From positions 62,001 to 126,000 of IMG/VR virus record IMGVR_UViG_3300024308_000016: DNA of 64,000 bases; one strand, written 5' to 3'. Position 1 is the stretch's first letter, and every line of letters begins with the position of its first letter. The notes beneath the pieces are model-generated. The model did not search any database and was not told where the DNA came from. It was given only the letters and a program-made list of their open reading frames with translations. This document shows, in pieces, positions 11,641 to 55,513 of this stretch. The translations under genes and the position numbers were made by a program.

Positions 11641-11661
11641 CTCTAATAGAAAGCCTGCATC

Positions 11662-12015
11662 ATGCCGCATATGACTGTTCGTTTCGGAGCCATTGTCCCT
11701 GTACCCGAGGGCGCCAATCCCGTAGAGGTGACTAACAAAGCCACCTTGGCTCTCCGCACCACCATCGTGGGGCACCTTAGAAGTCTGAACAATCCATTGA
11801 CCATGCAGATAGGCCGCAGGTTCGATCCAAGTATTCCAGGCATCTACTTGTCCTTTCTGAGTCTGCAGCACTCCATTGATCGGGTGTCTATCAACGCGCT
11901 GGCCAAGTCCCTGGGGACGTCGGCCATGGTGGCGCATATGCCTGATCTCGATGACTACCTCGTGGCCAGAGGCTCTGATAAGAGTCAGCTGGCATACATA
12001 TTGAAATCGCTATGA
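11662..12015 (+). CDS. hypothetical protein
   Basis: AATAGAAAG at 11645. Confidence 0.7.
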   Translation: MPHMTVRFGAIVPVPEGANPVEVTNKATLALRTTIVGHLRSLNNPLTMQIGRRFDPSIPGIYLSFLSLQHSIDRVSINALAKSLGTSAMVAHMPDLDDYLVARGSDKSQLAYILKSL

Positions 12016-12413
12016 TCAACGTCCAAGAAGATCCAGTCCACTTCCTCAAAGGGCTGGCCAACGCCGCATCCGTCAAAGGTGTGGTCCATTACACCAGCGC
12101 CCCGGACAACGAAGTGCTCGTACGCAAGGGAGGCTTTGCACTGTTCAGTGACTATGGCCCTCTCATCGAGTGCAATGAATACCCAGTGGAGCCGCCTACA
12201 GTGGTGTTCATCCGGGAAAATGAGCCCCACTCCTTGTATGGGATCGAAGTGCGTGAAGATGGCTCTATCCATCTGACGGTGCGCTCGTATGGTCTGATGG
12301 TATACCCGGCATCGTTTGATCAGTACGAGCAGATCTTCAACCAATGCAATTCCAAGAAACGCACCAAGATCGAACACATCGCAGCTTTCGAAGCCCCGAT
12401 ACTTTACAAGTAA
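12012..12413 (+). CDS. hypothetical protein
   Basis: ATGA coupling with upstream gene. Confidence 0.7.
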   Translation: MINVQEDPVHFLKGLANAASVKGVVHYTSAPDNEVLVRKGGFALFSDYGPLIECNEYPVEPPTVVFIRENEPHSLYGIEVREDGSIHLTVRSYGLMVYPASFDQYEQIFNQCNSKKRTKIEHIAAFEAPILYK

Positions 12414-12416
12414 CTC

Positions 12417-12462
12417 CACTGGTCCAGCTTCGGCTGGACCAGTGAGTGCCCCTTTCTTTTTT
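12417..12462 (+). terminator. intrinsic terminator
   Basis: CACTGGTCCAGC-TTCG-GCTGGACCAGTG plus T tract. Confidence 0.75.
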
Positions 12463-12587
12463 GTTCTTGATTTCTGGAACTGATCCTATGGCATTCTCGT
12501 AGCCATCTCCTGAAGTTCGGGAGATCTTTATGGAGGGCTCAGTTTTCTTTCTGAGCCTGCCTGCTTCTCAAACTTTCGAGGAAGAAC

Positions 12588-13046
12588 ATGCAGATTTTCA
12601 AAGTCAATGCACTGCCGTCGACTCTCGTGGCCGATGCACTGTACATCGTCAAGTCCGGCACCACCAATGCCCGTATCTACGTCGCCAACCATGATGGCAC
12701 AGGCAAGCTGGACATCACCTCCGATGTCTCCACTGCCTTCCCGCGCTATGACCTGAGCGTGGGCGCCACCACTGGCGCGATGGATCTGGCCGTCTCCCAG
12801 GTCTACACCATCGCCAACACCGCAGGCTCGGGTGTGCATCAGCTGTCGCTGACCAACGCTCCCACGGGCCGCGCTATGTGCGTGGTCGTGAAGGTCAACG
12901 GCAATGGTGGCTCCATCGCCTTCCCTTCTGGCGCCAAGGTGGCCGATGGCGTCGACACGGAACTGGGCACCACGAGCACGATCTTCGTGCTGCTGGTGAT
13001 CGGCACCGACGTCACTGTCACTTCCAACCTGCGCATCAACAACTGA
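12588..13046 (+). CDS. putative virion/tail-associated small beta protein
   Basis: GAGGA upstream; G/T/S-rich beta-strand composition; precedes a DUF4376-like gene. Confidence 0.55.
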   Translation: MQIFKVNALPSTLVADALYIVKSGTTNARIYVANHDGTGKLDITSDVSTAFPRYDLSVGATTGAMDLAVSQVYTIANTAGSGVHQLSLTNAPTGRAMCVVVKVNGNGGSIAFPSGAKVADGVDTELGTTSTIFVLLVIGTDVTVTSNLRINN

Positions 13047-13083
13047 TCCGCGGCTGACCCCCTCATCTCAAGGAGAATACCCT

Positions 13084-13776
13084 ATGACGCAAGAAAGCGC
13101 AGCAGCTGACGTGATGGTGACCGCGGAAACCCGCCTGATCCATGTCCCCACTCAGGCTTATCCGGTCACGCTGGCCACGGTCAAACTGCCGGTGCTCGTC
13201 AGTTTCGGCAAGGAAGTACCCCTGTCGTACCTGAAGGAGCAAGGCGGCTATGACATCGTGCACCTGGCCGCCGCACCCATGGGTGATGTGGTCACCGAGA
13301 CCCAGCCAGCCATGGACTCCGAAGGCCGCTGGACTCAGCAGTACCATGTACGCGACTTCGATGCCAACGAACTCAAGGATCGCCTGGACGCAGCCAAGGT
13401 CGTGGCCGATTCGGTGCGCCTGAACGAGCAAAACGAGATCCTGGCCAAGGGCGCCGAATTTGACTTCGGCGGCGAGCATGGTGTGCAACACGCGCAGATG
13501 CGCTCCATGGACCGCGTCAATGTCTCGGGTCTGGCCATCAAGGTGCTTCGCAACCCCGAACACACCGACGTGTTTTGCACCTTCGAAAACAAGGTCATCC
13601 CTGTGGACGCAGCTGCCATCACGGCGCTGAGCGACCGCGTGCTGGCCGCCTATACCCGCGTCATGGCCGAAAGCTGGACGCTGCGTGAGCTGATCGAGTC
13701 CGCCACCAAGGTCAGCGACATCCCCACTGCTGCCGACATCAAGGCGATCTTCACCGATGCTGTCAAGCTGAGCTAA
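13084..13776 (+). CDS. DUF4376-like tail fibre assembly-associated protein
   Basis: AAGGAG upstream; QQYHVRD...RNEILAKGAEFDF...DRVNVSGL pattern typical of fibre chaperones. Confidence 0.55.
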   Translation: MTQESAAADVMVTAETRLIHVPTQAYPVTLATVKLPVLVSFGKEVPLSYLKEQGGYDIVHLAAAPMGDVVTETQPAMDSEGRWTQQYHVRDFDANELKDRLDAAKVVADSVRLNEQNEILAKGAEFDFGGEHGVQHAQMRSMDRVNVSGLAIKVLRNPEHTDVFCTFENKVIPVDAAAITALSDRVLAAYTRVMAESWTLRELIESATKVSDIPTAADIKAIFTDAVKLS

Positions 13777-13787
13777 TCAGTGTGCAT

Positions 13788-13832
13788 CATACCCCACCAT
13801 CCCGGCCTTGCGGCCGGGATGGTGGGAGTATG
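13788..13832. terminator. long hairpin between convergent genes
   Basis: CCCACCATCCCGGCC-TTGC-GGCCGGGATGGTGGG, 15 bp stem. Confidence 0.75.
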
Positions 13833-13837
13833 TCGAC

Positions 13838-14986
13838 TTATGTACCGTACAGGACTTCGTGATTGACAAAATCACCAATAAACCAATTGTCAGTGGTCCG
13901 GGCCAAAGACAGCGCCCTGTATGCGTCTGGTCGACCGCGTACTTGCGTCCACTTACGTGTAGCAGTCCAGTCGGGGTTGAAGTCATAGCGCAACAGGTAG
14001 CCAGTAGTAGCGCCTGAGACATACGCCGCGATCAACATGTACGACTTATCCGCCGACATCCTGATACCGCCGCCGAAATAGCGAATCTCTCCAACGTCAG
14101 AAGGAGGTAAGATGGTTGCTTTATGTTCGAAGACATCGATGCCGTCGAACACATAAACATAAATTCCACCCGTATAGTTGGACCCGCCGTTTGTCTGGGT
14201 AGGGGCGCCTACCAGGATAACGGTACCGTCATCAGACACCTCAACAGCTGACCCAAAGTTCGACCCCGCTACAACGTTTGGCATTGTCAGCCACCCCACC
14301 AAATGCCAATCCGGATATCCTCGGAAGACTCCGATTCGATTTTGAGACGGCACACCAACGACCATTGTAGAGAGATTGCGGCTGATCTGAATGATGTTCG
14401 CAGATCCAACTGTGCCAGACAGATCAATCCGATTGAACGCAGTCCAGGAGCTGCCTAGATAAGTGAACGTATGGATGCGGCCATTGTTGGAGTTCTCCCC
14501 CGGTGCCAAAACAGCCATGTACGTGCCATCGGGGCTCAGGGCTACAGAGTTACCGAAATAGCCGTTATTGACCGGCGACGGGGAAACGGTCCTGAATTTA
14601 CTCCATGAGCCGTCACCATTTAGCGTGTACGTCATCACGAAGCCCTGGTTACCGTCGTTGTTGTAGCTTGCTCCCCCGGACACAAAGAACGTACAGTCGC
14701 TATTGCTGGCAAACGTCTTCAAGTTACCACTGTTGGCCGCAGTTGAGGAATCGGTCATCACTGACTCCTGAACCATCAGACCATTTTGAGTCTTGAATGT
14801 GTAGATAGACGCCAGAGCCTGGGTGTCGTAGGGCGCACAAAACGCAGCTCGCTGCCCATCCGCCGAGATCAGTGTCTGAGCGGGGAAGAACTGGTAGGTG
14901 CGCTTCGGGTTGAGTGCCGGTACATTGATGATCCGACCTGTTGCACCGGATTCAGCTTTGGCTGCACCTGTGAGAAGTTCCAGCAT
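13838..14986 (-). CDS. FG-GAP-like beta-propeller virion/adhesin protein
   Basis: Starts MLELLTG; repeats FGNSVALSPDG..AVLAPGE, FGSAVEVSDDG..LVGAP, FGGGIRMSAD. Confidence 0.75.
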   Translation of the reverse strand: MLELLTGAAKAESGATGRIINVPALNPKRTYQFFPAQTLISADGQRAAFCAPYDTQALASIYTFKTQNGLMVQESVMTDSSTAANSGNLKTFASNSDCTFFVSGGASYNNDGNQGFVMTYTLNGDGSWSKFRTVSPSPVNNGYFGNSVALSPDGTYMAVLAPGENSNNGRIHTFTYLGSSWTAFNRIDLSGTVGSANIIQISRNLSTMVVGVPSQNRIGVFRGYPDWHLVGWLTMPNVVAGSNFGSAVEVSDDGTVILVGAPTQTNGGSNYTGGIYVYVFDGIDVFEHKATILPPSDVGEIRYFGGGIRMSADKSYMLIAAYVSGATTGYLLRYDFNPDWTATRKWTQVRGRPDAYRALSLARTTDNWFIGDFVNHEVLYGT

Positions 14987-14993
14987 AGTTGCC

Positions 14994-15758
14994 TCATGTC
15001 GGAAGGTTGGGGACCTCATTAGGAGGTACGAACTGCAGAATTGGCAACCACAGGCACTCCTTGCTGGAGCCGCCGATCAAGTACCGACCACGACTGCCAT
15101 TGGCCGCGGAGACGACCACCGTGATCATCTGGTTGGAATCATGGGAGGGGTGTTGGCAAAACACTTCCGGATTGCGGCCTGCGTAGGCGGGCTCGAAGTC
15201 ACTCAGCGGCAGCTTCCAGGCATTGGCGTATTCGCTGGCTGGGAAATAGGGTCGGTAAATCAGATCGAGAACTTCCCCGTTTTTGACGGGATCATTGCCG
15301 GTGTACTGGATGAACTTGACACCATCTTGATCCAGCAAGTTACGGGCAAACACCGTAGAGCCGTCACTGGTGGTGAACGTTTGATTCATGGTGTATGCGG
15401 TTTTTCCGATCATCGGGAACCTGGGGATCTCCGATGACGGCAGCAGCGCGTTGTAGTACACCTTGGTGTCGAAGTTCCATGCGAACAGTGTCCGACCAAT
15501 GGGGAACTGCGGCACATAGAGCACCTTACCTTTGCGGATAAACTTGCCCCACATATTGGTCGCTGGTGCGTCAGTGAAGTCGCGCTTATTCGAAGGCAGC
15601 AAAGCAGCCAGCTTCGAGCCCATGCCCAACACGGAGTCAGGTACACGGCCAAAGTAGCCATAGTCTTCAGTGCCCAGAGTGAGTACCTTGGTGCCGGGAC
15701 CCGACCAGGGGATTGTGCCGGGGGCTGGCGAGGACTCACGGGTGATTAGTTCAAGCAT
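14994..15758 (-). CDS. virion tail/fibre paralog, gene C type, short
   Basis: Starts MLELITR; WSGPGTKVLTLGTEDYGYFGRV signature. Confidence 0.75.
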   Translation of the reverse strand: MLELITRESSPAPGTIPWSGPGTKVLTLGTEDYGYFGRVPDSVLGMGSKLAALLPSNKRDFTDAPATNMWGKFIRKGKVLYVPQFPIGRTLFAWNFDTKVYYNALLPSSEIPRFPMIGKTAYTMNQTFTTSDGSTVFARNLLDQDGVKFIQYTGNDPVKNGEVLDLIYRPYFPASEYANAWKLPLSDFEPAYAGRNPEVFCQHPSHDSNQMITVVVSAANGSRGRYLIGGSSKECLWLPILQFVPPNEVPNLPT

Positions 15759-15818
15759 AATGTTTCTCCTATCAATTTATCTCTGATCCCTGGGCTATCC
15801 TGCCCAGGGATCAGAGCT

Positions 15819-16697
15819 TTACGCAGGCCCGATGTATTTCAGAGCGATAAGGACGTAGACAGCCGAGACCGTCCCCGTGGGTTCATTGAACGTCAGCGTG
15901 GTGCCGGTGTTGTCGATGTTCACTACTTTGCCTTGCTCATTCAAGGCCACGAATGTCGATGTGCGCGACACCGAAGAAGCCGTGTATTGAATAGGCGTGG
16001 TTGCAGGTGGGTTGATCAGCCAGCTATTGCCGATACTGCGTGCCATTGGCTCTGTGATGGCCACAGCCTTGTACTTGTAGCCACCGAACGTGTAGACGTT
16101 AGCCGTGGTGGCTGGGTTGTTCAAGTAAGAGGTCAGAGCCCAGACATTGGTGAGTACATCAGCGGCGGCCATGGATGTATTGCCCACACGGAAGATGTTC
16201 TCCAGATCCCAGGGGATCAGGTAGATCTGGCCTTCGATCACCACAGGCTCCCAAGTCGCAGCAGCTCCATTGGGTGATGGGCTATCGGCTACATTGCAGC
16301 CTGTGGTCACCAGAGCTGGCCAGTTGGTGACCAACGCTTGTGTAGGCTGAGCAGGAGCCGGCAGCATCACACCAACTTGTCCGCATCCGCGCGTGGTGAT
16401 CTTACGCGTGGAGGAGAACGCCGCAGGCATCCCCGGGAAGAAGGGACCGAAGTCCTCGATGTACATGTAGCTGAACGCCTGCAGCGGGATGAAGAACTCC
16501 CCTCCCGCATGCTTGTACTCTACACGGTACCACCACAAGCCTGGGTAGATGACAGACTCATCTGTGTAGGTATCGACATATGCGCCGGTGTATACGGGGG
16601 AGCCCTTGCCAAGATCGGCCCGTGTATCAGCGCGCCAGATACGGATGCTGGTGTCCTGGGTTGCTCCAGGGATATTGAGTTTGAAGCTCGGTTTCAT
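15819..16697 (-). CDS. virion tail/fibre protein, cassette 2 gene E
   Basis: Starts MKP; FGPF motif; ends LKYIGPA versus YEYVGPA in 1778-2680. Confidence 0.7.
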   Translation of the reverse strand: MKPSFKLNIPGATQDTSIRIWRADTRADLGKGSPVYTGAYVDTYTDESVIYPGLWWYRVEYKHAGGEFFIPLQAFSYMYIEDFGPFFPGMPAAFSSTRKITTRGCGQVGVMLPAPAQPTQALVTNWPALVTTGCNVADSPSPNGAAATWEPVVIEGQIYLIPWDLENIFRVGNTSMAAADVLTNVWALTSYLNNPATTANVYTFGGYKYKAVAITEPMARSIGNSWLINPPATTPIQYTASSVSRTSTFVALNEQGKVVNIDNTGTTLTFNEPTGTVSAVYVLIALKYIGPA

Positions 16698-16703
16698 ATT
16701 CAG

Positions 16704-17591
16704 TTACTCCTGAAACAGTTCCATGATCGGGATGAAGGAGTTGTTGGCCGAAGTCAACCCCACTGTGACGATCCCCAGTCCCACCGCAGATGCGTTGGGC
16801 ACTGTGGCCCACCCGAGCATGGCCGAACGATTGGCCGCTCCATAATCCGATGTGATGGTCGGTACACTGGAGGCAAAAGTGCTGTGCGCAAACCGGAAAG
16901 GAGCTGCGGAAGAGCGAGCCAAAGCACGCACCATGATCCGGTACAGGTCCAGAAATTCGGACTGGCCGAATGGCATGCCGTCAGCGAAATTCAGGCTGTA
17001 GCTACTGGATTCCACCAGTGTGTTGTTGTAGTCGTACAGCTTGGCGATGCGAGTATAGTACTGGCGAAAGCCGACCACACGCGTGGGAGCTGGTGCCTCC
17101 GGACCATACAAAGGAGTGATGCCGCCGCGCAGCAAGTTGGCTGCTTCCAAGGCAGTGGCGTTCTTGCCGGTATTGATCACAGGCGCACCCACATACAGGA
17201 TGCGTCCGCGATATGCGATCTTGAAGTAGCGAGAGTCAGGAGCGCTGTTGTACCAGTTAGATACGGGAAAGCCCACTTCGTAGTCATTGACCACGCCATA
17301 AAAGCCCAAGAACAAATCGCCCCACAGCAGCTCCTGAGGACCTGGGCCGGTGTCGGGCACGATGCGAACATTCAGTTCACGGGAGAAGGCGCTCTTGCCG
17401 TCAGCCTCCACCTTCAGTAGGTAGTACACCTGACCGCCCAAAGGCGCGGTGGCGTCCAGATAAGACTGCTCATTGCTAGTGAGAGTGACCAGCGGAGCTG
17501 GCAGGTTTTGCTGATCGATCGGAGAGTCGGAGCGATACAGCATCAGTGTCGAAGGGTTGTTCGGATTGACCCAGCTGACAAGTGCGGACAT
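16704..17591 (-). CDS. phiKZ gp131-like virion tail/fibre protein, cassette 2 gene D
   Basis: FN3-like N-terminus; DTGPGPQELLWGDLFLGFYGVV; clearly alignable to 2677-3576. Confidence 0.75.
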   Translation of the reverse strand: MSALVSWVNPNNPSTLMLYRSDSPIDQQNLPAPLVTLTSNEQSYLDATAPLGGQVYYLLKVEADGKSAFSRELNVRIVPDTGPGPQELLWGDLFLGFYGVVNDYEVGFPVSNWYNSAPDSRYFKIAYRGRILYVGAPVINTGKNATALEAANLLRGGITPLYGPEAPAPTRVVGFRQYYTRIAKLYDYNNTLVESSSYSLNFADGMPFGQSEFLDLYRIMVRALARSSAAPFRFAHSTFASSVPTITSDYGAANRSAMLGWATVPNASAVGLGIVTVGLTSANNSFIPIMELFQE

Positions 17592-17644
17592 GTTGTTTCC
17601 TTTTGAATGAAGAGGCTGCGCCTTCGGGCGCAGCCTGTAGGCAG

Positions 17645-19639
17645 TTATGCCACGAGTTTTGTCGGATCAAACACCGACAGCTGATTACGAGGACGATTGT
17701 CGTCGTAGGCGCCGGGTCGATTGGGGTTGGTTCCGGGACCCACCCAGATCTTACCGTCATTTTGCAGACCGCACACTCCAAGCGATTGAGGCGGGATGCC
17801 CAACGCTTTGATGCGAACGCTGTTGTCCGACAGATCCAAAATCACCGCATACGCCACCGATGGGGAAACATCGCTGAAGCCGCCGATGGCCACAACTTTG
17901 TTGTTCACCACTGTCGCTTGTCCGATGGCTTTGAAGCCATACGTCGTGGGCATTGGTAAAGTGCTCCAGGTGTTGGATGCGATATCATAGACCCGGATCA
18001 CGGTGTTCCAGGTATTGGTAGAACCTGTGGTGTTGAGGCCACCGATCAAGTACACCTTGGTAGGAGTCGCGGCCAGGGCTGCATAGTACAGTCCCATCCC
18101 AGGAGGAGCGATGACGGACCAGGTGTTGGTCGCCACATCGTACAAACCCGCTTCGTTGTAAGTCGTTCCAGACAAGTTGTAGCCGCCCACCAACATGATC
18201 TTGTTTTGCGTCGGCAAAGAGCAGACATTGGTGACCACTCGAGTGGAACCCGGAGTGGCGGCATGAGCTGTCGGTGACGAGGGGTTCGCAACAGGCCAAC
18301 TGTACATGTTTTTGGTCTGGCTGCCGGCGATGTAGCCATTCATCATGTAAAAGCGGCCGTTGTGCGTGCATCCTGAGTACCAGGTAAAGCCCGAGGGAGT
18401 TCCTGGAGCGATACGGCGCTTGGTCTTGGTGACAAAGTTGAAGACCGACATGTACGCCGGATACTTATCTTCCCCACCGCCTTGCGTTCCACCCATGCCA
18501 AACGGTGTATACATCTCATTGCCGTTGACCCATCCGGAGCAGCACTGAATCGCGGTGCCTTCATAGACAGCTTCCGGACGCACAACGTCTGGAGAAACCG
18601 GGAAAGATCGGGAGATCTGACCTGGTTCATTAAACGATTGCACGCCCGTGATCATCGGTGCCACAAAGCTCATCTGAGCGTATTCTTCGAACTTGATGAC
18701 CGGACCACGCGCAGAGCGCAGAACCGGGGAACGCAGACCTTCTACAGTCATCGTTGGTAGCACGATCGACTGATCCAAAGGAGCTCGGAAGTTGTACGGC
18801 GGAAGCATAGACTCAGCGATTCCCCAGATCACGGGCTGAGAATTCACCGCATCCGACCAACTCTCCAAATTGCTGATCGGCAGTGCGAGCTTCTTCTTGT
18901 CGTCTGTTGTCAGCAGTTGCACCACCGGAAGCCAGACCGTAGTATTGCCCATGGAGGTCTGAGCAACCTTATTCATGTCCGCATTGGTGGTATCGAGTCG
19001 AAGCACTGAACCCACTGTCGAGGAGATGATCTCTACCCCGCTAGTGTTGGCTTGTTGACCGGCAGTGACGCCGTTGATGTAGCTCGCCGGCAGCCGGATC
19101 CCCTGCGGATTAGTCCAATTGGCACCGAACACAGATACGATCAGGTTGTAGGCTTCAGATTCCGTGCTGAGCACTTCATCATAGACCACTGATGTCGCAT
19201 TGGGCTTGAGGTCGATCAGGCGCGGGAACAGCAAGTCCTTATTAGGGGCTGTATACACAGGGTTCATGTCGTACATGGGGCTGCCATCCGGCAGTGTGGC
19301 TGGGGCATCAGCCGTGCCGCGCTTCAGGCCGCTGTACGTCATCTTGGCCGCTTGCAGCTGGTTATACGTCACCAGCGCCGTCTTGAACGTTGGGATGAAA
19401 ACAACCGAGCCTTTGAAGAAGAACTTCATCCACTGATTGTCCGCGCTAGCGGAGTACAGTCGGGAAGCTTCCGGGATCTGGGCGTCATCCAACATCTTGG
19501 TGAAGAAACCCAGCTCCACTTCTGGAACCAGGCCAAAGAAGCCCAGATCCGTGTTCCCCATCCGCAGGTATTTGGTACCTGGTCCGCTGTCGGAGTAGTA
19601 CGGCAGGTGGGAAGACTGCCGCATGAAGATTTCAAACAT
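17645..19639 (-). CDS. virion tail/fibre protein with C-terminal Kelch-like propeller, cassette 2 gene C
   Basis: MFEIFMR...DSGPGTKYLRMGNTDLGFFGLV; Kelch repeats IMLVGG..YDVATNTW and VYLIGG..YDIASNTW. Confidence 0.8.
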   Translation of the reverse strand: MFEIFMRQSSHLPYYSDSGPGTKYLRMGNTDLGFFGLVPEVELGFFTKMLDDAQIPEASRLYSASADNQWMKFFFKGSVVFIPTFKTALVTYNQLQAAKMTYSGLKRGTADAPATLPDGSPMYDMNPVYTAPNKDLLFPRLIDLKPNATSVVYDEVLSTESEAYNLIVSVFGANWTNPQGIRLPASYINGVTAGQQANTSGVEIISSTVGSVLRLDTTNADMNKVAQTSMGNTTVWLPVVQLLTTDDKKKLALPISNLESWSDAVNSQPVIWGIAESMLPPYNFRAPLDQSIVLPTMTVEGLRSPVLRSARGPVIKFEEYAQMSFVAPMITGVQSFNEPGQISRSFPVSPDVVRPEAVYEGTAIQCCSGWVNGNEMYTPFGMGGTQGGGEDKYPAYMSVFNFVTKTKRRIAPGTPSGFTWYSGCTHNGRFYMMNGYIAGSQTKNMYSWPVANPSSPTAHAATPGSTRVVTNVCSLPTQNKIMLVGGYNLSGTTYNEAGLYDVATNTWSVIAPPGMGLYYAALAATPTKVYLIGGLNTTGSTNTWNTVIRVYDIASNTWSTLPMPTTYGFKAIGQATVVNNKVVAIGGFSDVSPSVAYAVILDLSDNSVRIKALGIPPQSLGVCGLQNDGKIWVGPGTNPNRPGAYDDNRPRNQLSVFDPTKLVA

Positions 19640-19654
19640 ATTGGCTCCTTTGGG

Positions 19655-20533: not shown

Positions 20534-20536
20534 TGT

Positions 20537-22979: not shown

Positions 22980-23017
22980 TTTGTAAAGATTTTTGGTCAC
23001 ATATACTCTACTTGAAG
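22980..23017 (+). promoter_or_regulatory. phage promoter copy P2
   Basis: TTTGTAA-N8-GGTCACATATACTCTACTTGAAG, preceded by hairpin 22945-22970. Confidence 0.75.
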
Positions 23018-23062
23018 CAAAGCGCTTCAGTTTGTTTGTTTCAAATAGAAAGGTATCCAAAC

Positions 23063-23413
23063 ATGAACCGTATATTCGACTTTCTGGTGCTCCCGCTTTT
23101 GGCCATCGCTGTGCTGGTTGGCATCTTCCTGTTGAGTGTGCAGTCACACGAATCATTCACCATCACTCCGGAGTGCGATGTCTATGCCAGCACGTACTTC
23201 AATGAGTATGCAGTTGACTTCTCGGCTGTTCGCACTGTCACGCGCTGGAACCACACAGCGCCGAACATGACAGGTGCCGATATCACGGCCCGCGTGCTGA
23301 TCGATGGCCGTATCAAGCAGTTCAAGGAAACCTACGCCCGTGAGGAAGCCGATGAACTGATGGCCCACTTTGCTGCTTGTCGTCTGAAGCAACAAGCCAA
23401 ACTTCTGAAGTAA
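23063..23413 (+). CDS. membrane-anchored or secreted two-Cys protein, paralog 1
   Basis: Hydrophobic N-terminus; FTITPEC...HFAAC; AATAGAAAG at 23044. Confidence 0.7.
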   Translation: MNRIFDFLVLPLLAIAVLVGIFLLSVQSHESFTITPECDVYASTYFNEYAVDFSAVRTVTRWNHTAPNMTGADITARVLIDGRIKQFKETYAREEADELMAHFAACRLKQQAKLLK

Positions 23414-23431
23414 ATAGAAAGGGATTCCAAA

Positions 23432-23833
23432 ATGAAGACTGCAGCTCAACTCATCCAAGAGTACATCGCCTCCAAGATCATGGCCAGCGAGAACCCGGAC
23501 ATCGAGATCATCGAGCGTCTACGTTTGTTTGCTCCGGATGACGGCATCACCGTGACCCAAGCCTGGGGTCAGGAAAGTCTCCGGCCATTCCTCGAAAAGG
23601 AAAAGCACTGGGTGGTGATGCTCTCTCCAACGCTCTCGCCTTACATGTTCGCTTACCGCAAGCTGCCCATAAACGCGCTCGCGATCTTCAGTGAGCGGGA
23701 CTTCACCCGTGTTGCCACCGACGGCCGCAACTTCGTGCGCAAAGCTATGGTGATTGGTCCGTCGATGGAAGGATTGAACCTGATCAACACGCTGGTTCGG
23801 ATGGGCAACCCTATCGCGAACCCCAAGCCCTAA
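23432..23833 (+). CDS. hypothetical protein
   Basis: AATAGAAAG at 23413. Confidence 0.75.
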   Translation: MKTAAQLIQEYIASKIMASENPDIEIIERLRLFAPDDGITVTQAWGQESLRPFLEKEKHWVVMLSPTLSPYMFAYRKLPINALAIFSERDFTRVATDGRNFVRKAMVIGPSMEGLNLINTLVRMGNPIANPKP

Positions 23834-23852
23834 ATAGAAAGCCCTCGTTATC

Positions 23853-24530: not shown

Positions 24531-24539
24531 AGATCCTCC

Positions 24540-24782
24540 ATGAACGCTATCTCCTTGCCAGTGAGCGATGATTTCATCCTCCTGATAATCCCTCTGGTGC
24601 TAGTGACTGCACTTATCTATGTCTGGGTCTTCGACAGTGACCAAGAGGCCGAGTACCCGGATGTACCCATCTACGTGCAGATGGTCGATGGCATGCTGCG
24701 CATCTTCACCTCTTTGGCCACAGCCGGCTGGATCGCCATCATGATCGTACTCGCTGGCAAGGTTATCAAGTACGTCCTCTAA
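24540..24782 (+). CDS. small two-TM membrane protein
   Basis: Two hydrophobic stretches. Confidence 0.7.
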   Translation: MNAISLPVSDDFILLIIPLVLVTALIYVWVFDSDQEAEYPDVPIYVQMVDGMLRIFTSLATAGWIAIMIVLAGKVIKYVL

Positions 24783-24799
24783 TAGAAAGGTTTCTTATC

Positions 24800-26603: not shown

Positions 26604-26950
26604 AAGCAGTTCCTAACTGGGTCATCATCGTGCTAGCGATGGTGCTGGGCCTGATGATCGCAAATACGGCCGAGGCCTTCGAGCGTACGCAGTTTCGGGC
26701 AGCTTCGGTGGAGATCACCAAAAACTGTATGCTGCGCATCTTCTACGAGGACAACCTCGATGTGCGCACCACCAACGTCACCTGGATCGAGTCTATCCGC
26801 ACCGTCCCCATGAAGTCAGGGATGTTGAAGGTGGAAGTGGACTTTGTGGCGGCGTCTACCTTCCAAAGTCCGGTCGCCGTGATGCCAGCAGTCGATGTTC
26901 AGCGGCTGGTGGAACGCTTTAGCCGCTGCTCTGGACTGGAACTCAAATAG
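26600..26950 (+). CDS. secreted two-Cys protein, paralog 3
   Basis: Signal peptide ending AEA; EITKNC...RFSRCSG. Confidence 0.75.
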   Translation: MKAVPNWVIIVLAMVLGLMIANTAEAFERTQFRAASVEITKNCMLRIFYEDNLDVRTTNVTWIESIRTVPMKSGMLKVEVDFVAASTFQSPVAVMPAVDVQRLVERFSRCSGLELK

Positions 26951-26960
26951 AAAGCCTTCA

Positions 26961-30462: not shown

Positions 30463-30498
30463 TTCCTCCTTCCCTTTTCTCTTCAATAGAAAGCACAC

Positions 30499-31788: not shown

Positions 31789-31867
31789 GCATCATACCCT
31801 CTCGTCCCCTGAGCCCGCAAAGGCTCGGGGGATATCTCTTTGTGTTTCGCAATAGAAAGAACGTATC

Positions 31868-34639: not shown

Positions 34640-34683
34640 CACACCGTTTCAATATCTTTTAACCTTCAAATAGAAAGTTTCAA

Positions 34684-35232: not shown

Positions 35233-35263
35233 GTTCTCCCCTAAATAGAAAGGAACTCGTCCC

Positions 35264-36452: not shown

Positions 36453-36535
36453 GAATATCTTCCCCTGGAGTCCACTCAGCCTCACGGCTGGGTGGGTCTC
36501 CTTTTTTGTTTCTTCCCTAAATAGAAAGTTTTCCA

Positions 36536-38669: not shown

Positions 38670-38718
38670 CACTGGCCGGGCTCCTTCGGGAGTCCGGCTG
38701 GTGAGTGCTTTATTTTTT
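38670..38718 (+). terminator. intrinsic terminator
   Basis: TGGCCGGGCTCC-TTCG-GGAGTCCGGCTG plus T tract. Confidence 0.75.
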
Positions 38719-38760: not shown

Positions 38761-38830
38761 ATAGACCTGTGTTCTATTTATAGCATGCCGGTTTATCGGG
38801 TGTAGAGTACGCTAAATTGAAAGGAGTCCA

Positions 38831-44422: not shown

Positions 44423-44785
44423 ATGTTCGAAGCAGATATAGAGTTACCCCAGGGCTTCACAGAGCAGCAAGCGGCTGCTCGCCAGATCGCTCTCCAGTAT
44501 CTGGGGGTCGTCAGCAAGGTCACCGCCAACACTGACGGAGAGATCATTGCTCCCGAGCTATTGTGTCGCCTAGAGTCCGAGCTTGCCAAGGAAGTAGCCA
44601 TGCTATCCCTGCGGTACGGTGCCCAATCCTGGATGAATGACTTCGGTCATCGGTTCCGGTTCTCCGTCACATCCAACATGGATGCCATCGTGATCGATGA
44701 GACCAGCGGTCGTCTGTTCAGTATGTACCGCGGCCACGAGAGTGTCCTCAAGCATCACCAGTTCACCCCTATAACCGAGTCCTAA
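44423..44785 (+). CDS. hypothetical protein
   Basis: TGAAAG upstream. Confidence 0.65.
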   Translation: MFEADIELPQGFTEQQAAARQIALQYLGVVSKVTANTDGEIIAPELLCRLESELAKEVAMLSLRYGAQSWMNDFGHRFRFSVTSNMDAIVIDETSGRLFSMYRGHESVLKHHQFTPITES

Positions 44786-44799
44786 GTAGAAAGCCTGTC

Positions 44800-45443: not shown

Positions 45444-45481
45444 TTTGTAGATTACTGAGGTCACTTACACTTTACTTGAGG
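45444..45481 (+). promoter_or_regulatory. phage promoter copy P5
   Basis: TTTGTAG-N8-GGTCACTTACACTTTACTTGAGG. Confidence 0.8.
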
Positions 45482-45531
45482 ATGGCGTTTACGACCGATC
45501 CATATTTTATCGTTCAAATAGAAAGCTCTAT

Positions 45532-46074
45532 ATGTCAGGCATGTACGGGAAGATGAATATATCGAGTTGGCCGAGAATGGGGATATATGCGATCATTCCG
45601 ATGGGTGATGGTCGGATGTGGTGCAAGAAGGACTATAGCGTCAGCTGTCACGACTACTCTGAGAGATACGTAGCAACGAACCACTCTGCTGGATTGCTAG
45701 CTTCAAAAGCTGTACACACAGCGGCAATATGTAAGAAGATGGTCCACTCACAGGAGATACTTCGAGACATGGTCCAGGGTTCGACTGAGGTGCTGGATAT
45801 TCCCAGAAACCGAGCAGCCTTTGATGCCGTCGGTAACCTGCAGATGTTCATCGGGCTTTATTGTGAGTTGCCCGATGGCGATGAGCCGATCTACTCGACG
45901 TTCACTACTATGAGTCGAGGAGAAGTGTACAACCCCCTGTATGGTTGCCGAAACTCCGATGTGACACTGGCGCAGTTCCATCATCAGCTCGACCTCATCA
46001 TCAAGCTTGGCTTGTTTCGGTATGTCGACCATTTGCTCAACATATACATGAACGCACGCAAACGACTGGGGTAA
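45532..46074 (+). CDS. NPxYGK-family paralog 1
   Basis: YNPLYGCRNSDVT; AATAGAAAG at 45517. Confidence 0.75.
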   Translation: MSGMYGKMNISSWPRMGIYAIIPMGDGRMWCKKDYSVSCHDYSERYVATNHSAGLLASKAVHTAAICKKMVHSQEILRDMVQGSTEVLDIPRNRAAFDAVGNLQMFIGLYCELPDGDEPIYSTFTTMSRGEVYNPLYGCRNSDVTLAQFHHQLDLIIKLGLFRYVDHLLNIYMNARKRLG

Positions 46075-50162: not shown

Positions 50163-50200
50163 TTTGTGGAAGTTTTCAGTCACATATACTCTACTTGAGG
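50163..50200 (+). promoter_or_regulatory. phage promoter copy P6
   Basis: TTTGTGG-N8-AGTCACATATACTCTACTTGAGG. Confidence 0.75.
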
Positions 50201-50242
50201 CACACCGCTTCAATATCTTTGTTCGCTAACTGAAAGACTCAA

Positions 50243-51089: not shown

Positions 51090-51170
51090 TCCCAGCTCCC
51101 TCATCTCCGGCAGCCTTCGGGCTGTCGGAGGTATTGTTTTTTGTCGTCCTCTAATAGAAAGTCCCTGATC

Positions 51171-51697: not shown

Positions 51698-51730
51698 CTT
51701 CTCATCTCTATATAGAAAGGTCTATCCACC

Positions 51731-52948
51731 ATGGTCAATCCCGCTACCGCCATCCCCCGCAGCCAATGGAAGTTCCCCATCGGTCCTGATCGCGACACGA
51801 ATGCGTTCTTCTTGTTTCACTCTGTGCGGTCCGTGACTGCCGACGAGAACCGCGCCGCAGAAGTGGTGCTGCTCGACGCGCTGGTGCAGCACGCTAAAAA
51901 TGAGCTCAAGGAGGCTGAGGCCGTCGCTACTTTGCGCATCATCCAGACCTACGGCACCACGGAGCTGTGGGCGGGCGAGTCCGTCCGCAGCCTGGTGCTC
52001 CTCGTGCGGGAATACATGGACGCCAAAGTAAATGCTGCGCCTGCGAACTCCGAGTTCGACCGATACAAAACGCGGGTCATCGCCATGGCGCGCATCAAGA
52101 GCCCTCAGGACGTCCTGCATGAGATGCGCAAGTGGAGTGCTCGCCACATCGCGGTCGCCAGTGTAACGATCCAGCATCTGAAGGTGGTACGTGACGCCTT
52201 TTGCCTGACGGTGGGATTTTCCCAGTACCTGGAGGCGTTCAACGAGGAGATGGAGCGCATCTGCAAAGACGCCGGCATCGTCAACCGCGCTCCGGCCCTG
52301 TTCAAGACCGAGGACAAGGAGTTCCACGCGAGCTACAAGAATATCGATCACCTCTTGACGGTCGACTTCCTGACTAAGGTGCCCCTGGTTCTGCAAAAGC
52401 TCAGCCATTCTACCGATCCCCAGTTCTCGGACATCATGGTGCTGGTCGATTCGTTCAAGCGCACGATAGGCTACCAGGAGCTGCAAGGCAGTCTGCTGCC
52501 CCTGATCATCGGGCACGTCGATTACCTCAAGAGTCAGGGCGCCTGGATCGACAATGACCGTGGCGTGCCTGGCCCTCCTGTGGAAATCCCTGAACGCCTG
52601 GCCAAACAGCTGTACGCGTTCAACGAAGCGCTGGTCACCAAAAAGCCAGCCTGGGCGCTGAGTGTGTTTCGGATCATCAGCAAGTCCATCGCTGAGCAGC
52701 CGGCAGATGTTCAGGCGGCTGCGTTCACCAAGCTCAAGGCTCTGAGTGTGGACTTCCCCACGTTCACACGCCTGAACCTGGCTATGGCGCGCCGTCGCGC
52801 TACAGGTGAGCTCTTCAAGGCCATCGACACCATGAGTCGCACGCTGGGCCTGGATCCTCACCTGAGTGATGCTGAGGCCGGTATGGGGCTGGATCGGGAG
52901 ATCGAAGCGACTGTGGAGTTCATCATCGAGACCTTCAACCGCCGTTGA
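51731..52948 (+). CDS. hypothetical helical protein
   Basis: 405 aa; TAGAAAGG upstream. Confidence 0.8.
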   Translation: MVNPATAIPRSQWKFPIGPDRDTNAFFLFHSVRSVTADENRAAEVVLLDALVQHAKNELKEAEAVATLRIIQTYGTTELWAGESVRSLVLLVREYMDAKVNAAPANSEFDRYKTRVIAMARIKSPQDVLHEMRKWSARHIAVASVTIQHLKVVRDAFCLTVGFSQYLEAFNEEMERICKDAGIVNRAPALFKTEDKEFHASYKNIDHLLTVDFLTKVPLVLQKLSHSTDPQFSDIMVLVDSFKRTIGYQELQGSLLPLIIGHVDYLKSQGAWIDNDRGVPGPPVEIPERLAKQLYAFNEALVTKKPAWALSVFRIISKSIAEQPADVQAAAFTKLKALSVDFPTFTRLNLAMARRRATGELFKAIDTMSRTLGLDPHLSDAEAGMGLDREIEATVEFIIETFNRR

Positions 52949-53010
52949 TCGGCTTCATGCCTGGGGCACCTGCTCCAGGCACTTCCCAACCCTCTAATAG
53001 AAAGTTCGAT

Positions 53011-54048: not shown

Positions 54049-54051
54049 ACC

Positions 54052-54394
54052 GAAGGTGTAAACTAAAGATACACTTTTGTATATAGAGTGGCGGTGATAG
54101 CACCTGACCAAAAGACCCGGGCACCCGAAAGGGAGCTCGGGCCCCCACTCCCAGCAGCACTCGAAGAACACTCCGAACACTCCAGCTCACTCCAGTCACT
54201 CCAATCCTAGCGTAGCTTTACTCTGTAAAGCGAAGCTCTGATTAGCTAGAGCAGGGAACCATGCTCTAGCAACTGTGGTGTGCTCGCTAGTGAGCGTAGA
54301 TCTCAAGAGTACACACTACAGCCTGAGGATCAACTTTGAGCTGTAATAGCTGATGAGCAAAGGACTCAACCTACAACACAAGGAACTCGTACCC
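54052..54394. ncRNA. candidate structured non-coding RNA or leader with six CACTC(C/G) repeats
   Basis: No convincing ORF; consecutive hairpins, one with a GAAA tetraloop; repeats at 54146, 54158, 54169, 54178, 54188, 54197. Confidence 0.45.
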
Positions 54395-54508
54395 ATGACT
54401 CGTATCCTGCAGATCGCCGATGCGATCTTCTCCCCTATCTGCCTGATCATCGTAGCTGGCGCTGGCTTGGCCATGTGCTACGCTTTGGGACAGCTCATGC
54501 GTTTGTAA
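54395..54508 (+). CDS. 37-aa single-TM peptide (below the ORF-track cutoff)
   Basis: AAGGA upstream; MTRILQIADAIFSPICLIIVAGAGLAMCYALGQLMRL; followed by two hairpins. Confidence 0.6.
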   Translation: MTRILQIADAIFSPICLIIVAGAGLAMCYALGQLMRL

Positions 54509-54629
54509 GCGCCTAGGCCATCGACTTGCCGTATACACTACGGCAGTACCTCCACCACAGTCCCCTACTAAGAGGGGACTGTGGTGGGTGTATGTTGTGT
54601 ACTTAAATAGAAAGGTAAGGTAGAGTGTT

Positions 54630-54899
54630 ATGCAGGCAATTATAATCGCTGTATGTGCGGCGGTGGGACTTATGGTCTCTGTGGGGTGTGCGTTTATGCC
54701 CGCTTACAGCAAAGCTGCTGGTCTGATGATCGATGGCAAGATAAGCCACGAGCAGTTCGATCGGGTGATACTGAAGTACAAAGTACTGTACTCTGCGCTG
54801 GGCTGGCCTGTATATACAGGTGTGGTGGGTTCATTGGTGCTGGCTTTTCTGTATATCGCTGACTTGTTTGATCAAGTCGGTATGTTGATTGGAGGATAA
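54630..54899 (+). CDS. small two-TM membrane protein
   Basis: AATAGAAAG at 54606; two hydrophobic helices. Confidence 0.65.
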   Translation: MQAIIIAVCAAVGLMVSVGCAFMPAYSKAAGLMIDGKISHEQFDRVILKYKVLYSALGWPVYTGVVGSLVLAFLYIADLFDQVGMLIGG

Positions 54900-54903
54900 G
54901 AAA

Positions 54904-55182
54904 ATGGCTGTACATGTGTTTTGGGTGCTTATAAGCATCGTAGGCGCTATAGTGGCAGTGATGGGTGTATGGATGGGGTATATGCAGGCTGGGCACTATC
55001 GGCGTGACCTGAGCCTGCAGTACGGTCACTGGCACGTATTGAGCCGTGAGCAAGAGCGCAGGGCTTTGTGGATATGGATCAAAGGCACTATCGGCGGGGG
55101 CGTGGTGATAGCGTTGATGGCTGCGGTGACTCTGTGGCCTATACTGCTGACTGAATATAACCGCATGGTAACTGGGGGATAA
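54904..55182 (+). CDS. small two-TM membrane protein
   Basis: GGAGG upstream; two hydrophobic helices. Confidence 0.65.
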   Translation: MAVHVFWVLISIVGAIVAVMGVWMGYMQAGHYRRDLSLQYGHWHVLSREQERRALWIWIKGTIGGGVVIALMAAVTLWPILLTEYNRMVTGG

Positions 55183-55186
55183 GAAG

Positions 55187-55474
55187 ATGACTGATTACGA
55201 CAAGGCGATAGTATTGGTGGTGATGTGGTGCACGGGAGTGACGGTGCTCGCCTTCATGATAGCCTATATGGTCAATGGCTCGGCGTATGTGGAGCGCTGC
55301 AAACGTCGCGATGGCGGGGGCTACTTCTACGAGATGCATGAGCGCGACCAGCCGGGCAAGCTGCTGTACTGCGCCAAGTGGGTGCCGGTATGGTGGGTGG
55401 CGATCGCTGTCATCTACATCGGTCTGTTTGCCAGTGAGGCGATGTTTGTATACCGGACACTGACCGCTGGATAA
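55187..55474 (+). CDS. small two-TM membrane protein
   Basis: Two hydrophobic helices flanking a loop with two Cys. Confidence 0.65.
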   Translation: MTDYDKAIVLVVMWCTGVTVLAFMIAYMVNGSAYVERCKRRDGGGYFYEMHERDQPGKLLYCAKWVPVWWVAIAVIYIGLFASEAMFVYRTLTAG

Positions 55475-55513
55475 AGGCAGCTAGACAAGCTCCTCCTAAA
55501 TAGAAAGGACTAA

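What the first reader, a model, noticed from the sequence alone, without database searches (positions are those of the whole stretch)
11645..55507. Accessory genes use an AATAGAAAG initiation motif rather than GGAG
Exact AATAGAAAG occurs at least 16 times (11645, 23044, 23413, 23833, 24781, 26946, 30485, 31851, 34669, 35244, 36520, 45517, 51153, 52996, 54606, 55499), always 5-15 nt before a + strand start. About 0.24 copies are expected per strand for a random 9-mer. It often lacks GG and often contains the upstream stop codon. The minus-strand structural genes I checked use GGAG/GAGG-type sites. Inference: pairing to a ...CCUUUCU 16S 3-prime tail, or a site for a phage translation factor, giving these mRNAs a separate initiation channel.
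Basis: partly seen in the sequence, partly recalled or inferred. Interest (0 to 1): 0.65.

Follow-up and report, generated by a model that had tools for sequence, protein, structure and literature searches.

The report
GG-less ribosome-binding motif of early phage genes
A 272-kb phiKZ-like jumbo phage puts the same nine letters, AATAGAAAG, where a ribosome-binding site normally sits in front of dozens of genes in its early-promoter region, while its virion genes keep ordinary GGAG-type sites; it is a real lineage-specific variant whose mechanism is still unproven.

Summary
AATAGAAAG occurs 16 times in the window and 34 times in the 272,393-bp phage genome. Every copy is on the + strand, and 33 of 34 lie 5-15 nt before a start codon; about 0.2 copies are expected by chance. 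The invariant core is [A/T]GAAAG. The core without a GGAG/GAGG/AGGA site marks 59 of 155 + strand genes in the early-promoter region, against 3 of 107 other genes (p 3e-13).

It is not the early promoter. A separate 30-nt element (TCACATATACTCTACTTGAGG) plays that role and lies 25-45 nt upstream of some copies. The closest relative keeps that promoter but carries AAAAGGAAA, an ordinary AAGGA site, at the same place, also in front of orthologous genes. So the motif is most likely a translation-initiation element.

Pairing of AGAAAG with a CUUUCU 16S tail is plausible. The phage's NrdA is closest to Burkholderiales, whose 16S genes end CCTCCTTTCT. The host is unknown, however. The AATA part and the C that usually follows the motif are not explained by pairing. 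The spacing to the start is about 2 nt shorter than for GGAG sites.

No phage S21, S1, RegA or RegB homologue was found. No usable RNA data exist. A separate initiation channel remains speculation.

The parts
11645..11653 (+). AATAGAAAG copy, 8 nt before the ATG of ORF 11662-12015 (117 aa)
23044..23052 (+). AATAGAAAG copy, 10 nt before an ATG; lies 29 nt downstream of the early-promoter element at 23001
23413..23421 (+). AATAGAAAG copy overlapping the upstream TAA stop, 10 nt before the ATG of 23432-23833
23833..23841 (+). AATAGAAAG copy overlapping the upstream TAA stop, 11 nt before the ATG of 23853-24530
24781..24789 (+). AATAGAAAG copy overlapping the upstream TAA stop, 10 nt before the ATG of 24800-25291
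26946..26954 (+). AATAGAAAG copy, 6 nt before an ATG (183-aa reading frame to 27512)
30485..30493 (+). AATAGAAAG copy, 5 nt before the ATG of 30499-31788 (glutathionylspermidine synthase). The start is confirmed by end-to-end N-terminal alignment with the G001 orthologue
31851..31859 (+). AATAGAAAG copy, 8 nt before the ATG of 31868-33193; 18 nt after a 12-bp hairpin (31804-31833)
34669..34677 (+). AATAGAAAG copy in the 5' leader behind the early-promoter element at 34623, 6 nt before the ATG of 34684-35232. Unchanged in strain variants whose flanks differ (2-nt deletion at 34667, substitutions at 34680 and 34681)
35244..35252 (+). AATAGAAAG copy, 11 nt before the ATG of 35264-36157 (nucleotidyltransferase)
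36520..36528 (+). AATAGAAAG copy, 7 nt before the ATG of 36536-37507; follows the hairpin 36470-36497 and a TTTTTTG run
45517..45525 (+). AATAGAAAG copy behind the early-promoter element at 45465, 6 nt before the ATG of 45532-46074
51153..51161 (+). AATAGAAAG copy, 9 nt before an ATG (83-aa frame); follows a hairpin and a T run
52996..53004 (+). AATAGAAAG copy, 6 nt before an ATG (345-aa frame to 54048)
54606..54614 (+). AATAGAAAG copy, 15 nt before the ATG of 54630-54899. This is the longest spacer, and it also contains AAGG and GAG
55499..55507 (+). AATAGAAAG copy, 6 nt before a GTG or 12 nt before an ATG of the frame ending at 55939
38815..38823 (+). Variant AATTGAAAG running into GAG (AATTGAAAGGAG), 7 nt before the ATG of 38831-39484. 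A hybrid of the GAAAG core with a canonical SD
44785..44793 (+). Variant AGTAGAAAG, 6 nt before the ATG of 44800-45399
51711..51719 (+). Variant TATAGAAAG, 11 nt before the ATG of 51731-52948
60198..60206 (+). Variant CATAGAAAG, 6 nt before the ATG of 60213-62003 (596 aa, phrog_3520, conserved in phiKZ-like phages)
23001..23015 (+). Core (ATATACTCTACTTGA) of the 30-nt candidate early (virion RNA polymerase) promoter. Other window copies lie at 34623-34637, 45465-45479 and 50184-50198
   Evidence: conserved in relatives; fits the description of jumbo-phage early promoters in PMC7598289
13838..21535 (-). Array of minus-strand paralogous virion structural protein genes with AGGAG/AAGGA-type sites and no motif. 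A second array lies at 1778-7248

Best explanation
AATAGAAAG is the conserved core of the translation-initiation region of the early-class mRNAs of a deep-branching phiKZ-like jumbo phage. It is an RNA-level ribosome-binding element. It is not the early promoter.

How it is built: it lies in a G-poor, pyrimidine-rich, almost structure-free leader, 5-11 nt before the AUG. Its invariant part, [A/U]GAAAG, takes the place of GGAG.

How it most likely works: AGAAAG (UAGAAAG) forms a short, weak duplex with the U-rich extreme 3' end (CUUUCU, perhaps CUUUCUA) of the host 16S rRNA, which many bacteria including Burkholderiales encode. The open A-rich leader would help the 30S subunit to dock.

What is shown: the position, the strand, the gene class, and the replacement of the motif by an ordinary AAGGA site in relatives.

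What is inferred: the pairing partner, the host, and any temporal or regulatory meaning.
For: 1. All 34 copies are on the coding strand, and 33 lie 5-15 nt before a start. Several of these starts are confirmed by end-to-end alignment with orthologues.
2. The spacing (mean 8.1 nt, range 5-11) is of SD type; for GGAG it is 7.05 nt.
3. A different 30-nt element fits the early promoter and lies 25-45 nt upstream of some copies. The motif is therefore inside the leader, consistent with phiKZ early 5'UTRs of 31-40 nt (PMC8244752, PMC7598289).
4. Consecutive genes of one operon each carry a copy (window 23044-24789), as an RBS would and a promoter need not.
5. Relative G001 keeps the promoter but has AAAAGGAAA (16 forward, 1 reverse) at the same place. 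Orthologous genes carry the species-specific version. Other relatives have AAGGA or AGAGGAAG there.
6. Hybrids such as AATTGAAAGGAG and GAAAGGAAG read as one continuous complement of CCUCCUUUC.
7. Class A leaders pair at -5.6 to -6.5 kcal/mol with CCUCCUUUCU(A), against -1.95 with an E. coli-type tail. They are the least structured: MFE -5.8, against -10.1 for canonical sites and -16.8 for random windows.
8. Host hints point to Burkholderiales, whose 16S genes read CCTCCTTTCT. AGAAAG at the SD position is 11/0.8 (observed/expected) in Ralstonia phage RP12 and 5/0.7 in Burkholderia phage FLC9, against 2/0.9 and 2/1.0 in Pseudomonas and E. coli phages.
9. The class association is strong: odds ratio 25, p 3e-13.
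Against: - The host and its mature 16S end are unknown.
- Nine to thirteen positions are conserved (C-T-Y-A-AATAGAAAG), far more than a 6-bp duplex needs.
- The AATA prefix has no complement in Burkholderiales 16S flanks (1 of 401 genomes).
- The base after the motif is C in 16 of 34 copies and G in only 7, so pairing is not extended toward the CCUCC core.
- In 16S register the motif sits 1.8 nt closer to the start than GGAG sites (p 8e-7).
- GAAAG alone is not an enriched SD in 200-kb samples of Variovorax and Pandoraea, though the gene calls there were crude.
- Against the extended tail, class A pairing is only slightly stronger than that of random 20-mers (about -6 against -4.9).
- Several copies follow terminator-like hairpins with no room for another promoter in between. 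That would also suit a promoter or a processing site.
Confidence: 0.5

Rival explanations
1. The motif is the recognition site of a sequence-specific trans-acting factor: a phage or host RNA-binding protein or endoribonuclease. That factor would switch the early mRNA class on or off as a block, as T4 RegB (which cuts GGAG in early SD sites) and RegA do. The SD-like position would then serve to control ribosome access, not to pair with rRNA. This can coexist with a weak RBS function.
For: - Uniformity over 9-13 nt is much greater than in the phage's own canonical sites, as expected for a protein or RNA reader.
- The motif is restricted to one gene class.
- It changes in concert between relatives while the promoter stays the same.
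- It is unchanged in strain variants whose immediate flanks mutated, at one site.
- Burkholderia phage FLC9 also has a signature 9-mer, AAACAAGGA, with 32 copies on one strand. Its AAAC part cannot pair with 16S.
Against: - No RegA, RegB, S1 or S21 homologue was found in the phage. For RegA and RegB the control genomes did not ring either, so that result is weak.
- No candidate reader was identified.
- The variants keep only GAAAG, so any reader would have to tolerate changes at positions 1-4.
- An Hfq (ARN)3 reading (AAU-AGA-AAG) fails: the supposedly free N positions are invariant, while the A and R positions are the ones that vary.
Confidence: 0.2
2. The motif is a DNA-level signal: a short promoter that overlaps the transcription start (like the phiKZ late T-3ATG+1 element) for the non-virion RNA polymerase. 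It would produce mRNAs with leaders of only 10-16 nt.
For: - Jumbo-phage non-virion polymerase promoters can be as short as 4 nt and overlap the start (PMC7598289).
- Several copies lie about 10-20 nt after hairpin plus T-run elements with no other promoter in between: window 11645, 31851, 36520, 51153.
- ATAG also precedes some canonical sites, as ATAGGAG.
- Sigma-70-like sites are no commoner than chance.
Against: - The motif is absent from virion and late genes.
- It lies inside leaders already served by an early promoter.
- It is repeated before each gene of tightly packed operons, at times overlapping the upstream stop.
- The distance to the ATG varies from 5 to 11 nt as for an RBS, and the spacer is G-poor.
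- In relatives the same place holds a plain AAGGA site.
- phiKZ early transcripts have 31-40-nt leaders and none is leaderless (PMC8244752).
Confidence: 0.15
3. The uniformity has no function beyond that of a generic weak RBS. The 9-mer spread with small regulatory cassettes (promoter or terminator plus leader) that shuffle genes in the plastic early region, as PeSL cassettes do in T4-type phages. It persists through recombination or gene conversion.
For: - Some leaders are clearly duplicated: GGCACACCGYTTCAATATCTTT... behind the promoters at genome 96623, 112184 and 266112.
- GTCTCCTTTTTTGTTT recurs before several copies.
- Assembly graphs of related strains break at these repeats.
- The early region is poor in orthologues between relatives.
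Against: - Information content falls to background within 4 nt upstream and immediately downstream of the 9-mer across the 34 copies. Most copies are therefore not parts of longer duplicated blocks.
- The strict orientation and spacing to starts, and the conservation of GAAAG in all variants, argue for selection on the motif itself.
Confidence: 0.1

Closest known systems
Extended Shine-Dalgarno pairing with long 16S tails (B. subtilis type: mature tail GAUCACCUCCUUUCU, ideal SD AGAAAGGAGG; PMC5732282)
   Same: Purine-rich element at SD distance. AGAAAG is the exact complement of the distal CUUUCU. Hybrids such as GAAAGGAG occur in this phage.
   Different: Here the distal part is used alone, without the GGAGG core, in about 60 genes. 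It carries an invariant AATA prefix that pairing does not explain. Its aligned spacing is about 2 nt shorter. The host tail is unknown.
T4 early-gene GGAG Shine-Dalgarno sites and the RegB/RegA system (my own knowledge of the T4 literature)
   Same: One temporal class of phage mRNAs shares a particular RBS sequence that differs from the RBS of later genes. That makes class-wide post-transcriptional control possible.
   Different: No RegB or RegA homologue was detected. The motif is GG-less. No cleavage or binding data exist.
Signature RBS 9-mers of related jumbo phages: AAAAGGAAA in IMGVR_UViG_3300035670_000017 and AAACAAGGA in Burkholderia phage FLC9
   Same: Each has tens of exact copies on the coding strand, 5-9 nt before ATG, with an A-rich 5' extension. 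The first also shares the same early promoter and carries its motif in front of orthologous genes.
   Different: Both keep the canonical AAGGA core. FLC9's copies are spread over the whole genome rather than over one region.
phiKZ-type early (virion RNA polymerase) promoters (PMC7598289, PMC8244752)
   Same: A highly repeated, phage-specific motif in front of early genes that can be found by sequence alone.
   Different: That role is taken here by a separate 30-nt element. AATAGAAAG lies downstream of it, too close to the ATG, and is not conserved in relatives that keep the promoter.
SD-independent, A-rich or unstructured leaders (Bacteroidota genes; S1-dependent enhancers; my own knowledge)
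   Same: G-poor, weakly folded leaders rich in A and pyrimidines.
   Different: Those lack a fixed 9-mer. In addition, this phage's other genes use strong canonical SD sites, so its host ribosome does read SD.

Membership tests
Shine-Dalgarno element | Lies on the mRNA strand a few nucleotides (about 4-12) upstream of the start codon | tested here: met
   33 of 34 copies lie 5-15 nt before a start. For the GAAAG core the mean is 8.1 nt and the range 5-11.
Shine-Dalgarno element | Complementary to the single-stranded 3' tail of the host 16S rRNA | tested here: inconclusive
   (U)AGAAAG complements CUUUCU(A), which Burkholderiales 16S genes encode. It does not complement an E. coli-type tail. 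The host and its mature 3' end are unknown. The AATA part is not complementary.
Shine-Dalgarno element | Contains part of the GGAGG core | tested here: not met
   27 of 34 copies (10 of 16 in the window) have no GG. 59 early-region genes have the GAAAG core without GGAG, GAGG or AGGA.
Shine-Dalgarno element | Translation depends on the mRNA-rRNA duplex | not testable with these tools
   Needs reporters, toeprinting or orthogonal ribosomes.
Jumbo-phage early (vRNAP) promoter | Conserved AT-rich block centred near -10 of the start site, upstream of early operons, with leaders of about 30-40 nt | tested here: not met
   AATAGAAAG ends 5-11 nt from the ATG and occurs inside operons. The separate element TCACATATACTCTACTTGAGG (14 copies) fits instead (PMC7598289, PMC8244752).
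phiKZ-late-type promoter overlapping the transcription start | Short motif at the start site of late or virion genes | tested here: not met
   3 of 107 genes outside the early-region + strand set carry the core, and none of the window's virion genes do. Start sites themselves could not be mapped.
RegB/RegA-type class control of early mRNAs | The phage encodes the nuclease or repressor | tested here: inconclusive
   PF10715 and PF01818 gave no match, but the controls rang nowhere either.
RegB/RegA-type class control of early mRNAs | The shared target sequence lies in the RBS of early but not late genes | tested here: met
   Odds ratio 25, p 3e-13.
Hfq distal-face (ARN)n site | A and R positions conserved, N positions free | tested here: not met
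   AAU-AGA-AAG fits in form. In the variants, however, positions 1-4 change while the N positions 6 and 9 stay invariant.

The most novel reading that the evidence does not exclude
The early mRNAs of this phiKZ-like jumbo phage form a translational regulon of their own. A GG-less, 13-nt leader signal would be read by something other than the canonical anti-SD core: either the extreme 3' end of 16S rRNA made available or favoured during takeover, or an unrecognised phage factor. Early proteins could then be made, or shut off, as a block, independently of host and late-phage messages.
Probability: 0.12. Interest if true: 0.8.

Novelty: new variant of a known kind. Interest (0 to 1): 0.45.

Why it matters
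Phages with their own RNA polymerases are thought to time gene expression through promoters. A class-specific ribosome-binding signal would add a translational layer.

It would also give a sequence handle for three things:
- recognising early genes in uncultured jumbo phages;
- guessing the host's 16S tail type from the phage alone;
- building expression parts for hosts with long 16S tails.

The contrast between relatives that share a promoter but not the RBS motif is a ready-made comparative system. If the motif turns out to be only a weak distal-tail SD, the finding is a modest annotation aid: gene callers trained on GGAG will misplace these starts.

Tried and rejected
- Early promoter: rejected, because a separate 30-nt element fills that role.
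- Middle promoter of phiKZ type (TACT at -22): rejected on geometry, since the start site would fall inside the ORF (PMC8244752).
- Leftovers of duplicated leaders: mostly rejected, because conservation ends within 4 nt of the 9-mer.
- Stop-codon cluster for translational coupling: a minor contribution only, with 6 of 34 copies overlapping a stop.
- Hfq (ARN)3 site: rejected on the pattern of variation.
- Phage-encoded S21 or S1: none found. RegA or RegB: none found, with uninformative controls.
- Rfam families and tRNAs in the window: none.
- Close relatives by capsid protein in IMG/VR and in GTDB genomes: none. A search with a two-sequence DNA-polymerase alignment found only G001.
- Expression data: all 21 runs that hold the phage are Logan contigs and none is a reliable RNA run. 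Starts and ends could therefore not be mapped.
- Laid contigs gave strain variation at a single motif site only, because the table was truncated.
- Extended-SD flank statistics (T or A before AAGGA) did not distinguish tail types.
- The 596-aa protein at window 60213-62003 has no sequence match in the PDB.
- No structure prediction, complex prediction or large protein search was needed.
- No alternative genetic code was used.

Full report
WHAT THE WINDOW IS

The window is bases 62,001-126,000 of a 272,393-bp IMG/VR virus record with 56% G+C, rated complete. The record encodes a phiKZ-type major capsid protein (Pfam PhiKZ_MCP, 6e-145). It also encodes a beta-like subunit of a multisubunit RNA polymerase, which runs off the end of the window (genome 124526-126703). 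The nearest cultured relative by capsid is only 32% identical (Burkholderia phage FLC9), followed by Ralstonia and Xanthomonas phages. This is therefore a deep-branching phiKZ-like jumbo phage from a subsurface metagenome. Close variants occur in invertebrate-gut, wastewater and other samples. About 87% of the genes I called are on the + strand. Gene calls are my own, from a codon-usage model, so individual starts are provisional. Several starts are confirmed because orthologues align from residue 1.

THE OBSERVATION

AATAGAAAG occurs 16 times in the window, all on the + strand at the stated coordinates. Shuffles give 0.18 copies. The genome has 34 forward and 0 reverse copies. Thirty-three of the 34 are followed within 5-15 nt by a start that opens a substantial ORF.

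The aligned copies show an extended consensus C-T-Y-A-AATAGAAAG with G-poor flanks. Information content drops to background beyond that, so the copies are not pieces of longer repeats.

One-mismatch and related forms keep GAAAG and vary at positions 1-4. Examples are TATAGAAAG, ATTAGAAAG, AATTGAAAG, ATAAGAAAG, ATAGGAAAG and AACTGAAAGAC. With unbiased first-candidate starts, GAAAG lies at -19 to -4 in 58 genes, against 2.9 expected.

The statement about the minus-strand genes is right. They are paralogous virion structural proteins with AGGAG/AAGGA sites.

WHICH GENES CARRY IT

I scored the stretch from -20 to -4 before each start. Class A means [A/T]GAAAG with no GGAG, GAGG or AGGA. Class B means one of those canonical sites with no [A/T]GAAAG. 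A+B means both.

A second, longer repeat, gaaanTTTCAgTCACATATACTCTACTTGAGG, occurs about 14 times on the + strand. It matches the description of jumbo-phage early promoters: a conserved AT-rich block near -10, detectable by sequence alone, upstream of early operons (PMC7598289). Its copies define a region of genome 247-272 kb plus 0-126 kb.

In that region 59 of 155 + strand genes are class A, against 3 of 107 genes elsewhere (odds ratio 25, p 3e-13). Within the window the + strand counts are 24 class A, 5 A+B, 17 class B and 14 with neither. The class is therefore 'genes of the early-promoter region' rather than 'accessory genes'. It includes a glutathionylspermidine synthase, a nucleotidyltransferase, two AAA ATPases and a conserved 596-aa phiKZ-group protein.

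PROMOTER OR RIBOSOME-BINDING SITE?

Five points favour an RNA-level, translation-linked role.

1. The motif lies 25-45 nt downstream of the early-promoter element at window 23044, 34669 and 45517, and at genome 266158. That places it inside the leader. phiKZ early leaders are 31-40 nt and none is leaderless (PMC8244752).
2. Consecutive genes of one operon each have a copy (window 23044, 23413, 23833, 24781). Three of those copies overlap the upstream stop.
3. The spacing to the start is 5-11 nt (mean 8.1), close to that of GGAG in the same genome (mean 7.05).
4. Sigma-70-like promoters are no commoner than chance. The phiKZ middle-promoter geometry (motif at -22) would put the transcription start inside the ORF.
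5. The comparative evidence is the strongest point. A 167.7-kb relative, IMGVR_UViG_3300035670_000017 (G001 here; 47% G+C), is 65-70% identical in conserved genes. It keeps the promoter element in 24 copies. It has only 1+1 AATAGAAAG. Instead, AAAAGGAAA (16 forward, 1 reverse) sits 5-8 nt before ATG behind the same kind of CT-rich tract. Orthologous genes carry the species-specific form. For example, the G000 gene starting at 120695 has ATAAGAAAG where its G001 orthologue at 150218 has AAAAGGAAA. The G000 gene at 92499 has AATAGAAAG where the G001 gene at 94904 has CTGAAAGAC. Further metagenomic relatives with the same promoter have AAGGA, AGAGGAAG, TAGGAG or GAAAGG there.

The G000 motif is therefore a derived, GG-less replacement of an ordinary SD site.

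DOES IT PAIR WITH THE 16S TAIL?

In favour:
- AGAAAG is the exact complement of CUUUCU.
- The hybrids AATTGAAAGGAG and GAAAGGAAG read as one continuous complement of CCUCCUUUC.
- Class A leaders pair at -5.6 to -6.5 kcal/mol with CCUCCUUUCU(A), against -1.95 kcal/mol with an E. coli-type tail.
- The phage NrdA is 64-69% identical to Burkholderiales NrdA, mostly Comamonadaceae, in all 80 best hits.
- The 16S genes of Variovorax, Pseudorhodoferax and Pandoraea end ...CACCTCCTTTCTGG or ...CACCTCCTTTCTAG.
- AGAAAG at the SD position is enriched in the Ralstonia phage RP12 (11 observed, 0.8 expected) and in the Burkholderia phage FLC9 (5, 0.7). It is not enriched in a Pseudomonas phage (2, 0.9) or in the E. 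coli phage Goslar (2, 1.0).
- A mature CCUCCUUUCU tail is documented for B. subtilis (PMC5732282).

Against:
- The host is only inferred, and no mature 3' end is known for it.
- CACCTCCTTTCTAT occurs in 1 of 401 Burkholderiales genomes sampled, so the invariant AATA is not explained by pairing.
- The base after the motif is C in 16 of 34 copies and G in 7, so pairing is not extended into the core.
- In 16S register the motif lies 1.8 nt nearer the start than canonical sites.
- GAAAG alone is not an enriched SD in 200 kb each of Variovorax and Pandoraea, though my gene calls there were crude.
- The predicted duplex is hardly stronger than that of random 20-mers.

Class A leaders are also strikingly unstructured and G-poor. 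Their mean MFE is -5.8 kcal/mol, against -10.1 for class B and -16.8 for random windows. Their G fraction is 0.15, against 0.22 and 0.27. This alone favours initiation.

OTHER READERS OF THE MOTIF

The uniformity over 9-13 nt invites a sequence-specific factor. The phage has no recognisable S21, S1, RegA or RegB (the last two are weak negatives). An Hfq (ARN)3 reading fails on the pattern of variation.

FLC9 has a comparable signature, AAACAAGGA, with 32 copies on one strand. Its AAAC part cannot pair with 16S either. An A-rich, phage-specific 5' extension of the RBS therefore seems to be a habit of this group of phages. Its reader is unknown.

Strain variants in four public runs left the copy at 34669 intact while changing both flanks. 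That is one site only, because the output was truncated.

Hairpin plus T-run elements directly precede copies at window 31851 and 36520 in the scan, and by eye at 11645 and 51153. This keeps a start-overlapping promoter or a processing site alive as minority explanations. No RNA data with true ends exist.

VERDICT

The best reading is a lineage-specific, GG-less ribosome-binding element of the genes of the early-promoter region. It probably works through a weak duplex with a CUUUCU tail in an open leader (confidence about 0.5). The 'separate initiation channel' has no support yet. The finding is a new variant of a known kind and of moderate interest.

Noticed in passing
window 22986-23018, 34608-34640, 45450-45482, 50169-50201 (about 14 copies in the genome): A 30-nt repeat, gaaanTTTCAgTCACATATACTCTACTTGAGG, is the likely virion-RNA-polymerase early promoter. 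It is conserved in the 167.7-kb relative (24 copies) and in several metagenome contigs, including a 242.8-kb one (JACCDS010041847.1).
   Followed up: partly
window 1778-7248 and 13838-21535, minus strand: Two arrays of at least nine paralogous virion structural protein genes (phrog_1062/3589) are embedded head-on in the + strand early region. All have canonical SD sites.
   Followed up: partly
window 31804-31833, 36470-36497, 28717-28754, 38670-38703: Strong GC-rich hairpins (12-17 bp). Some are followed by the recurring string GTCTCCTTTTTTGTTT and then directly by the motif and a gene. They could be terminators, attenuators or 3'-end stabilisers, and leave no room for another promoter.
   Followed up: no
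Burkholderia phage FLC9 (LC667451.1; loci L125-L141): FLC9 has its own signature RBS 9-mer, AAACAAGGA: 32 copies on one strand, 5-9 nt before ATG, spread over the whole genome. The AACA in it recalls the AR9 late-promoter element, but this was not examined.
   Followed up: partly
genome 186638-189544 (L016:6638-9544): A class Ia ribonucleotide reductase large subunit with an ATP cone is 64-69% identical to Burkholderiales NrdA, with Comamonadaceae on top. It is the best available hint to the host lineage.
   Followed up: partly
genome 28727-30856 (L010:8727-10856): A 709-aa protein, 62% identical in the relative, contains an SDTDS motif reminiscent of family-B DNA polymerase motif C. It was not examined further.
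   Followed up: no
genome 186517: This is the only AATAGAAAG copy with no start codon within 30 nt. It lies between a 155-aa gene and the ribonucleotide reductase gene, and is unexplained.
   Followed up: no
window 30499-31788 and 35264-36157: The motif-bearing genes include a glutathionylspermidine synthase homologue (with one 64-nt stretch 88% identical to Pseudomonas phage Bitten) and a nucleotidyltransferase of the RlaP / Pol-beta superfamily.
   Followed up: no
window 62526-63998 (runs off the 3' end of the window): Gene for an RNA polymerase beta-like subunit (Rpb2_6 domain, E 4.7e-10). It is preceded by the hybrid site GAAAGGAAG.
   Followed up: partly
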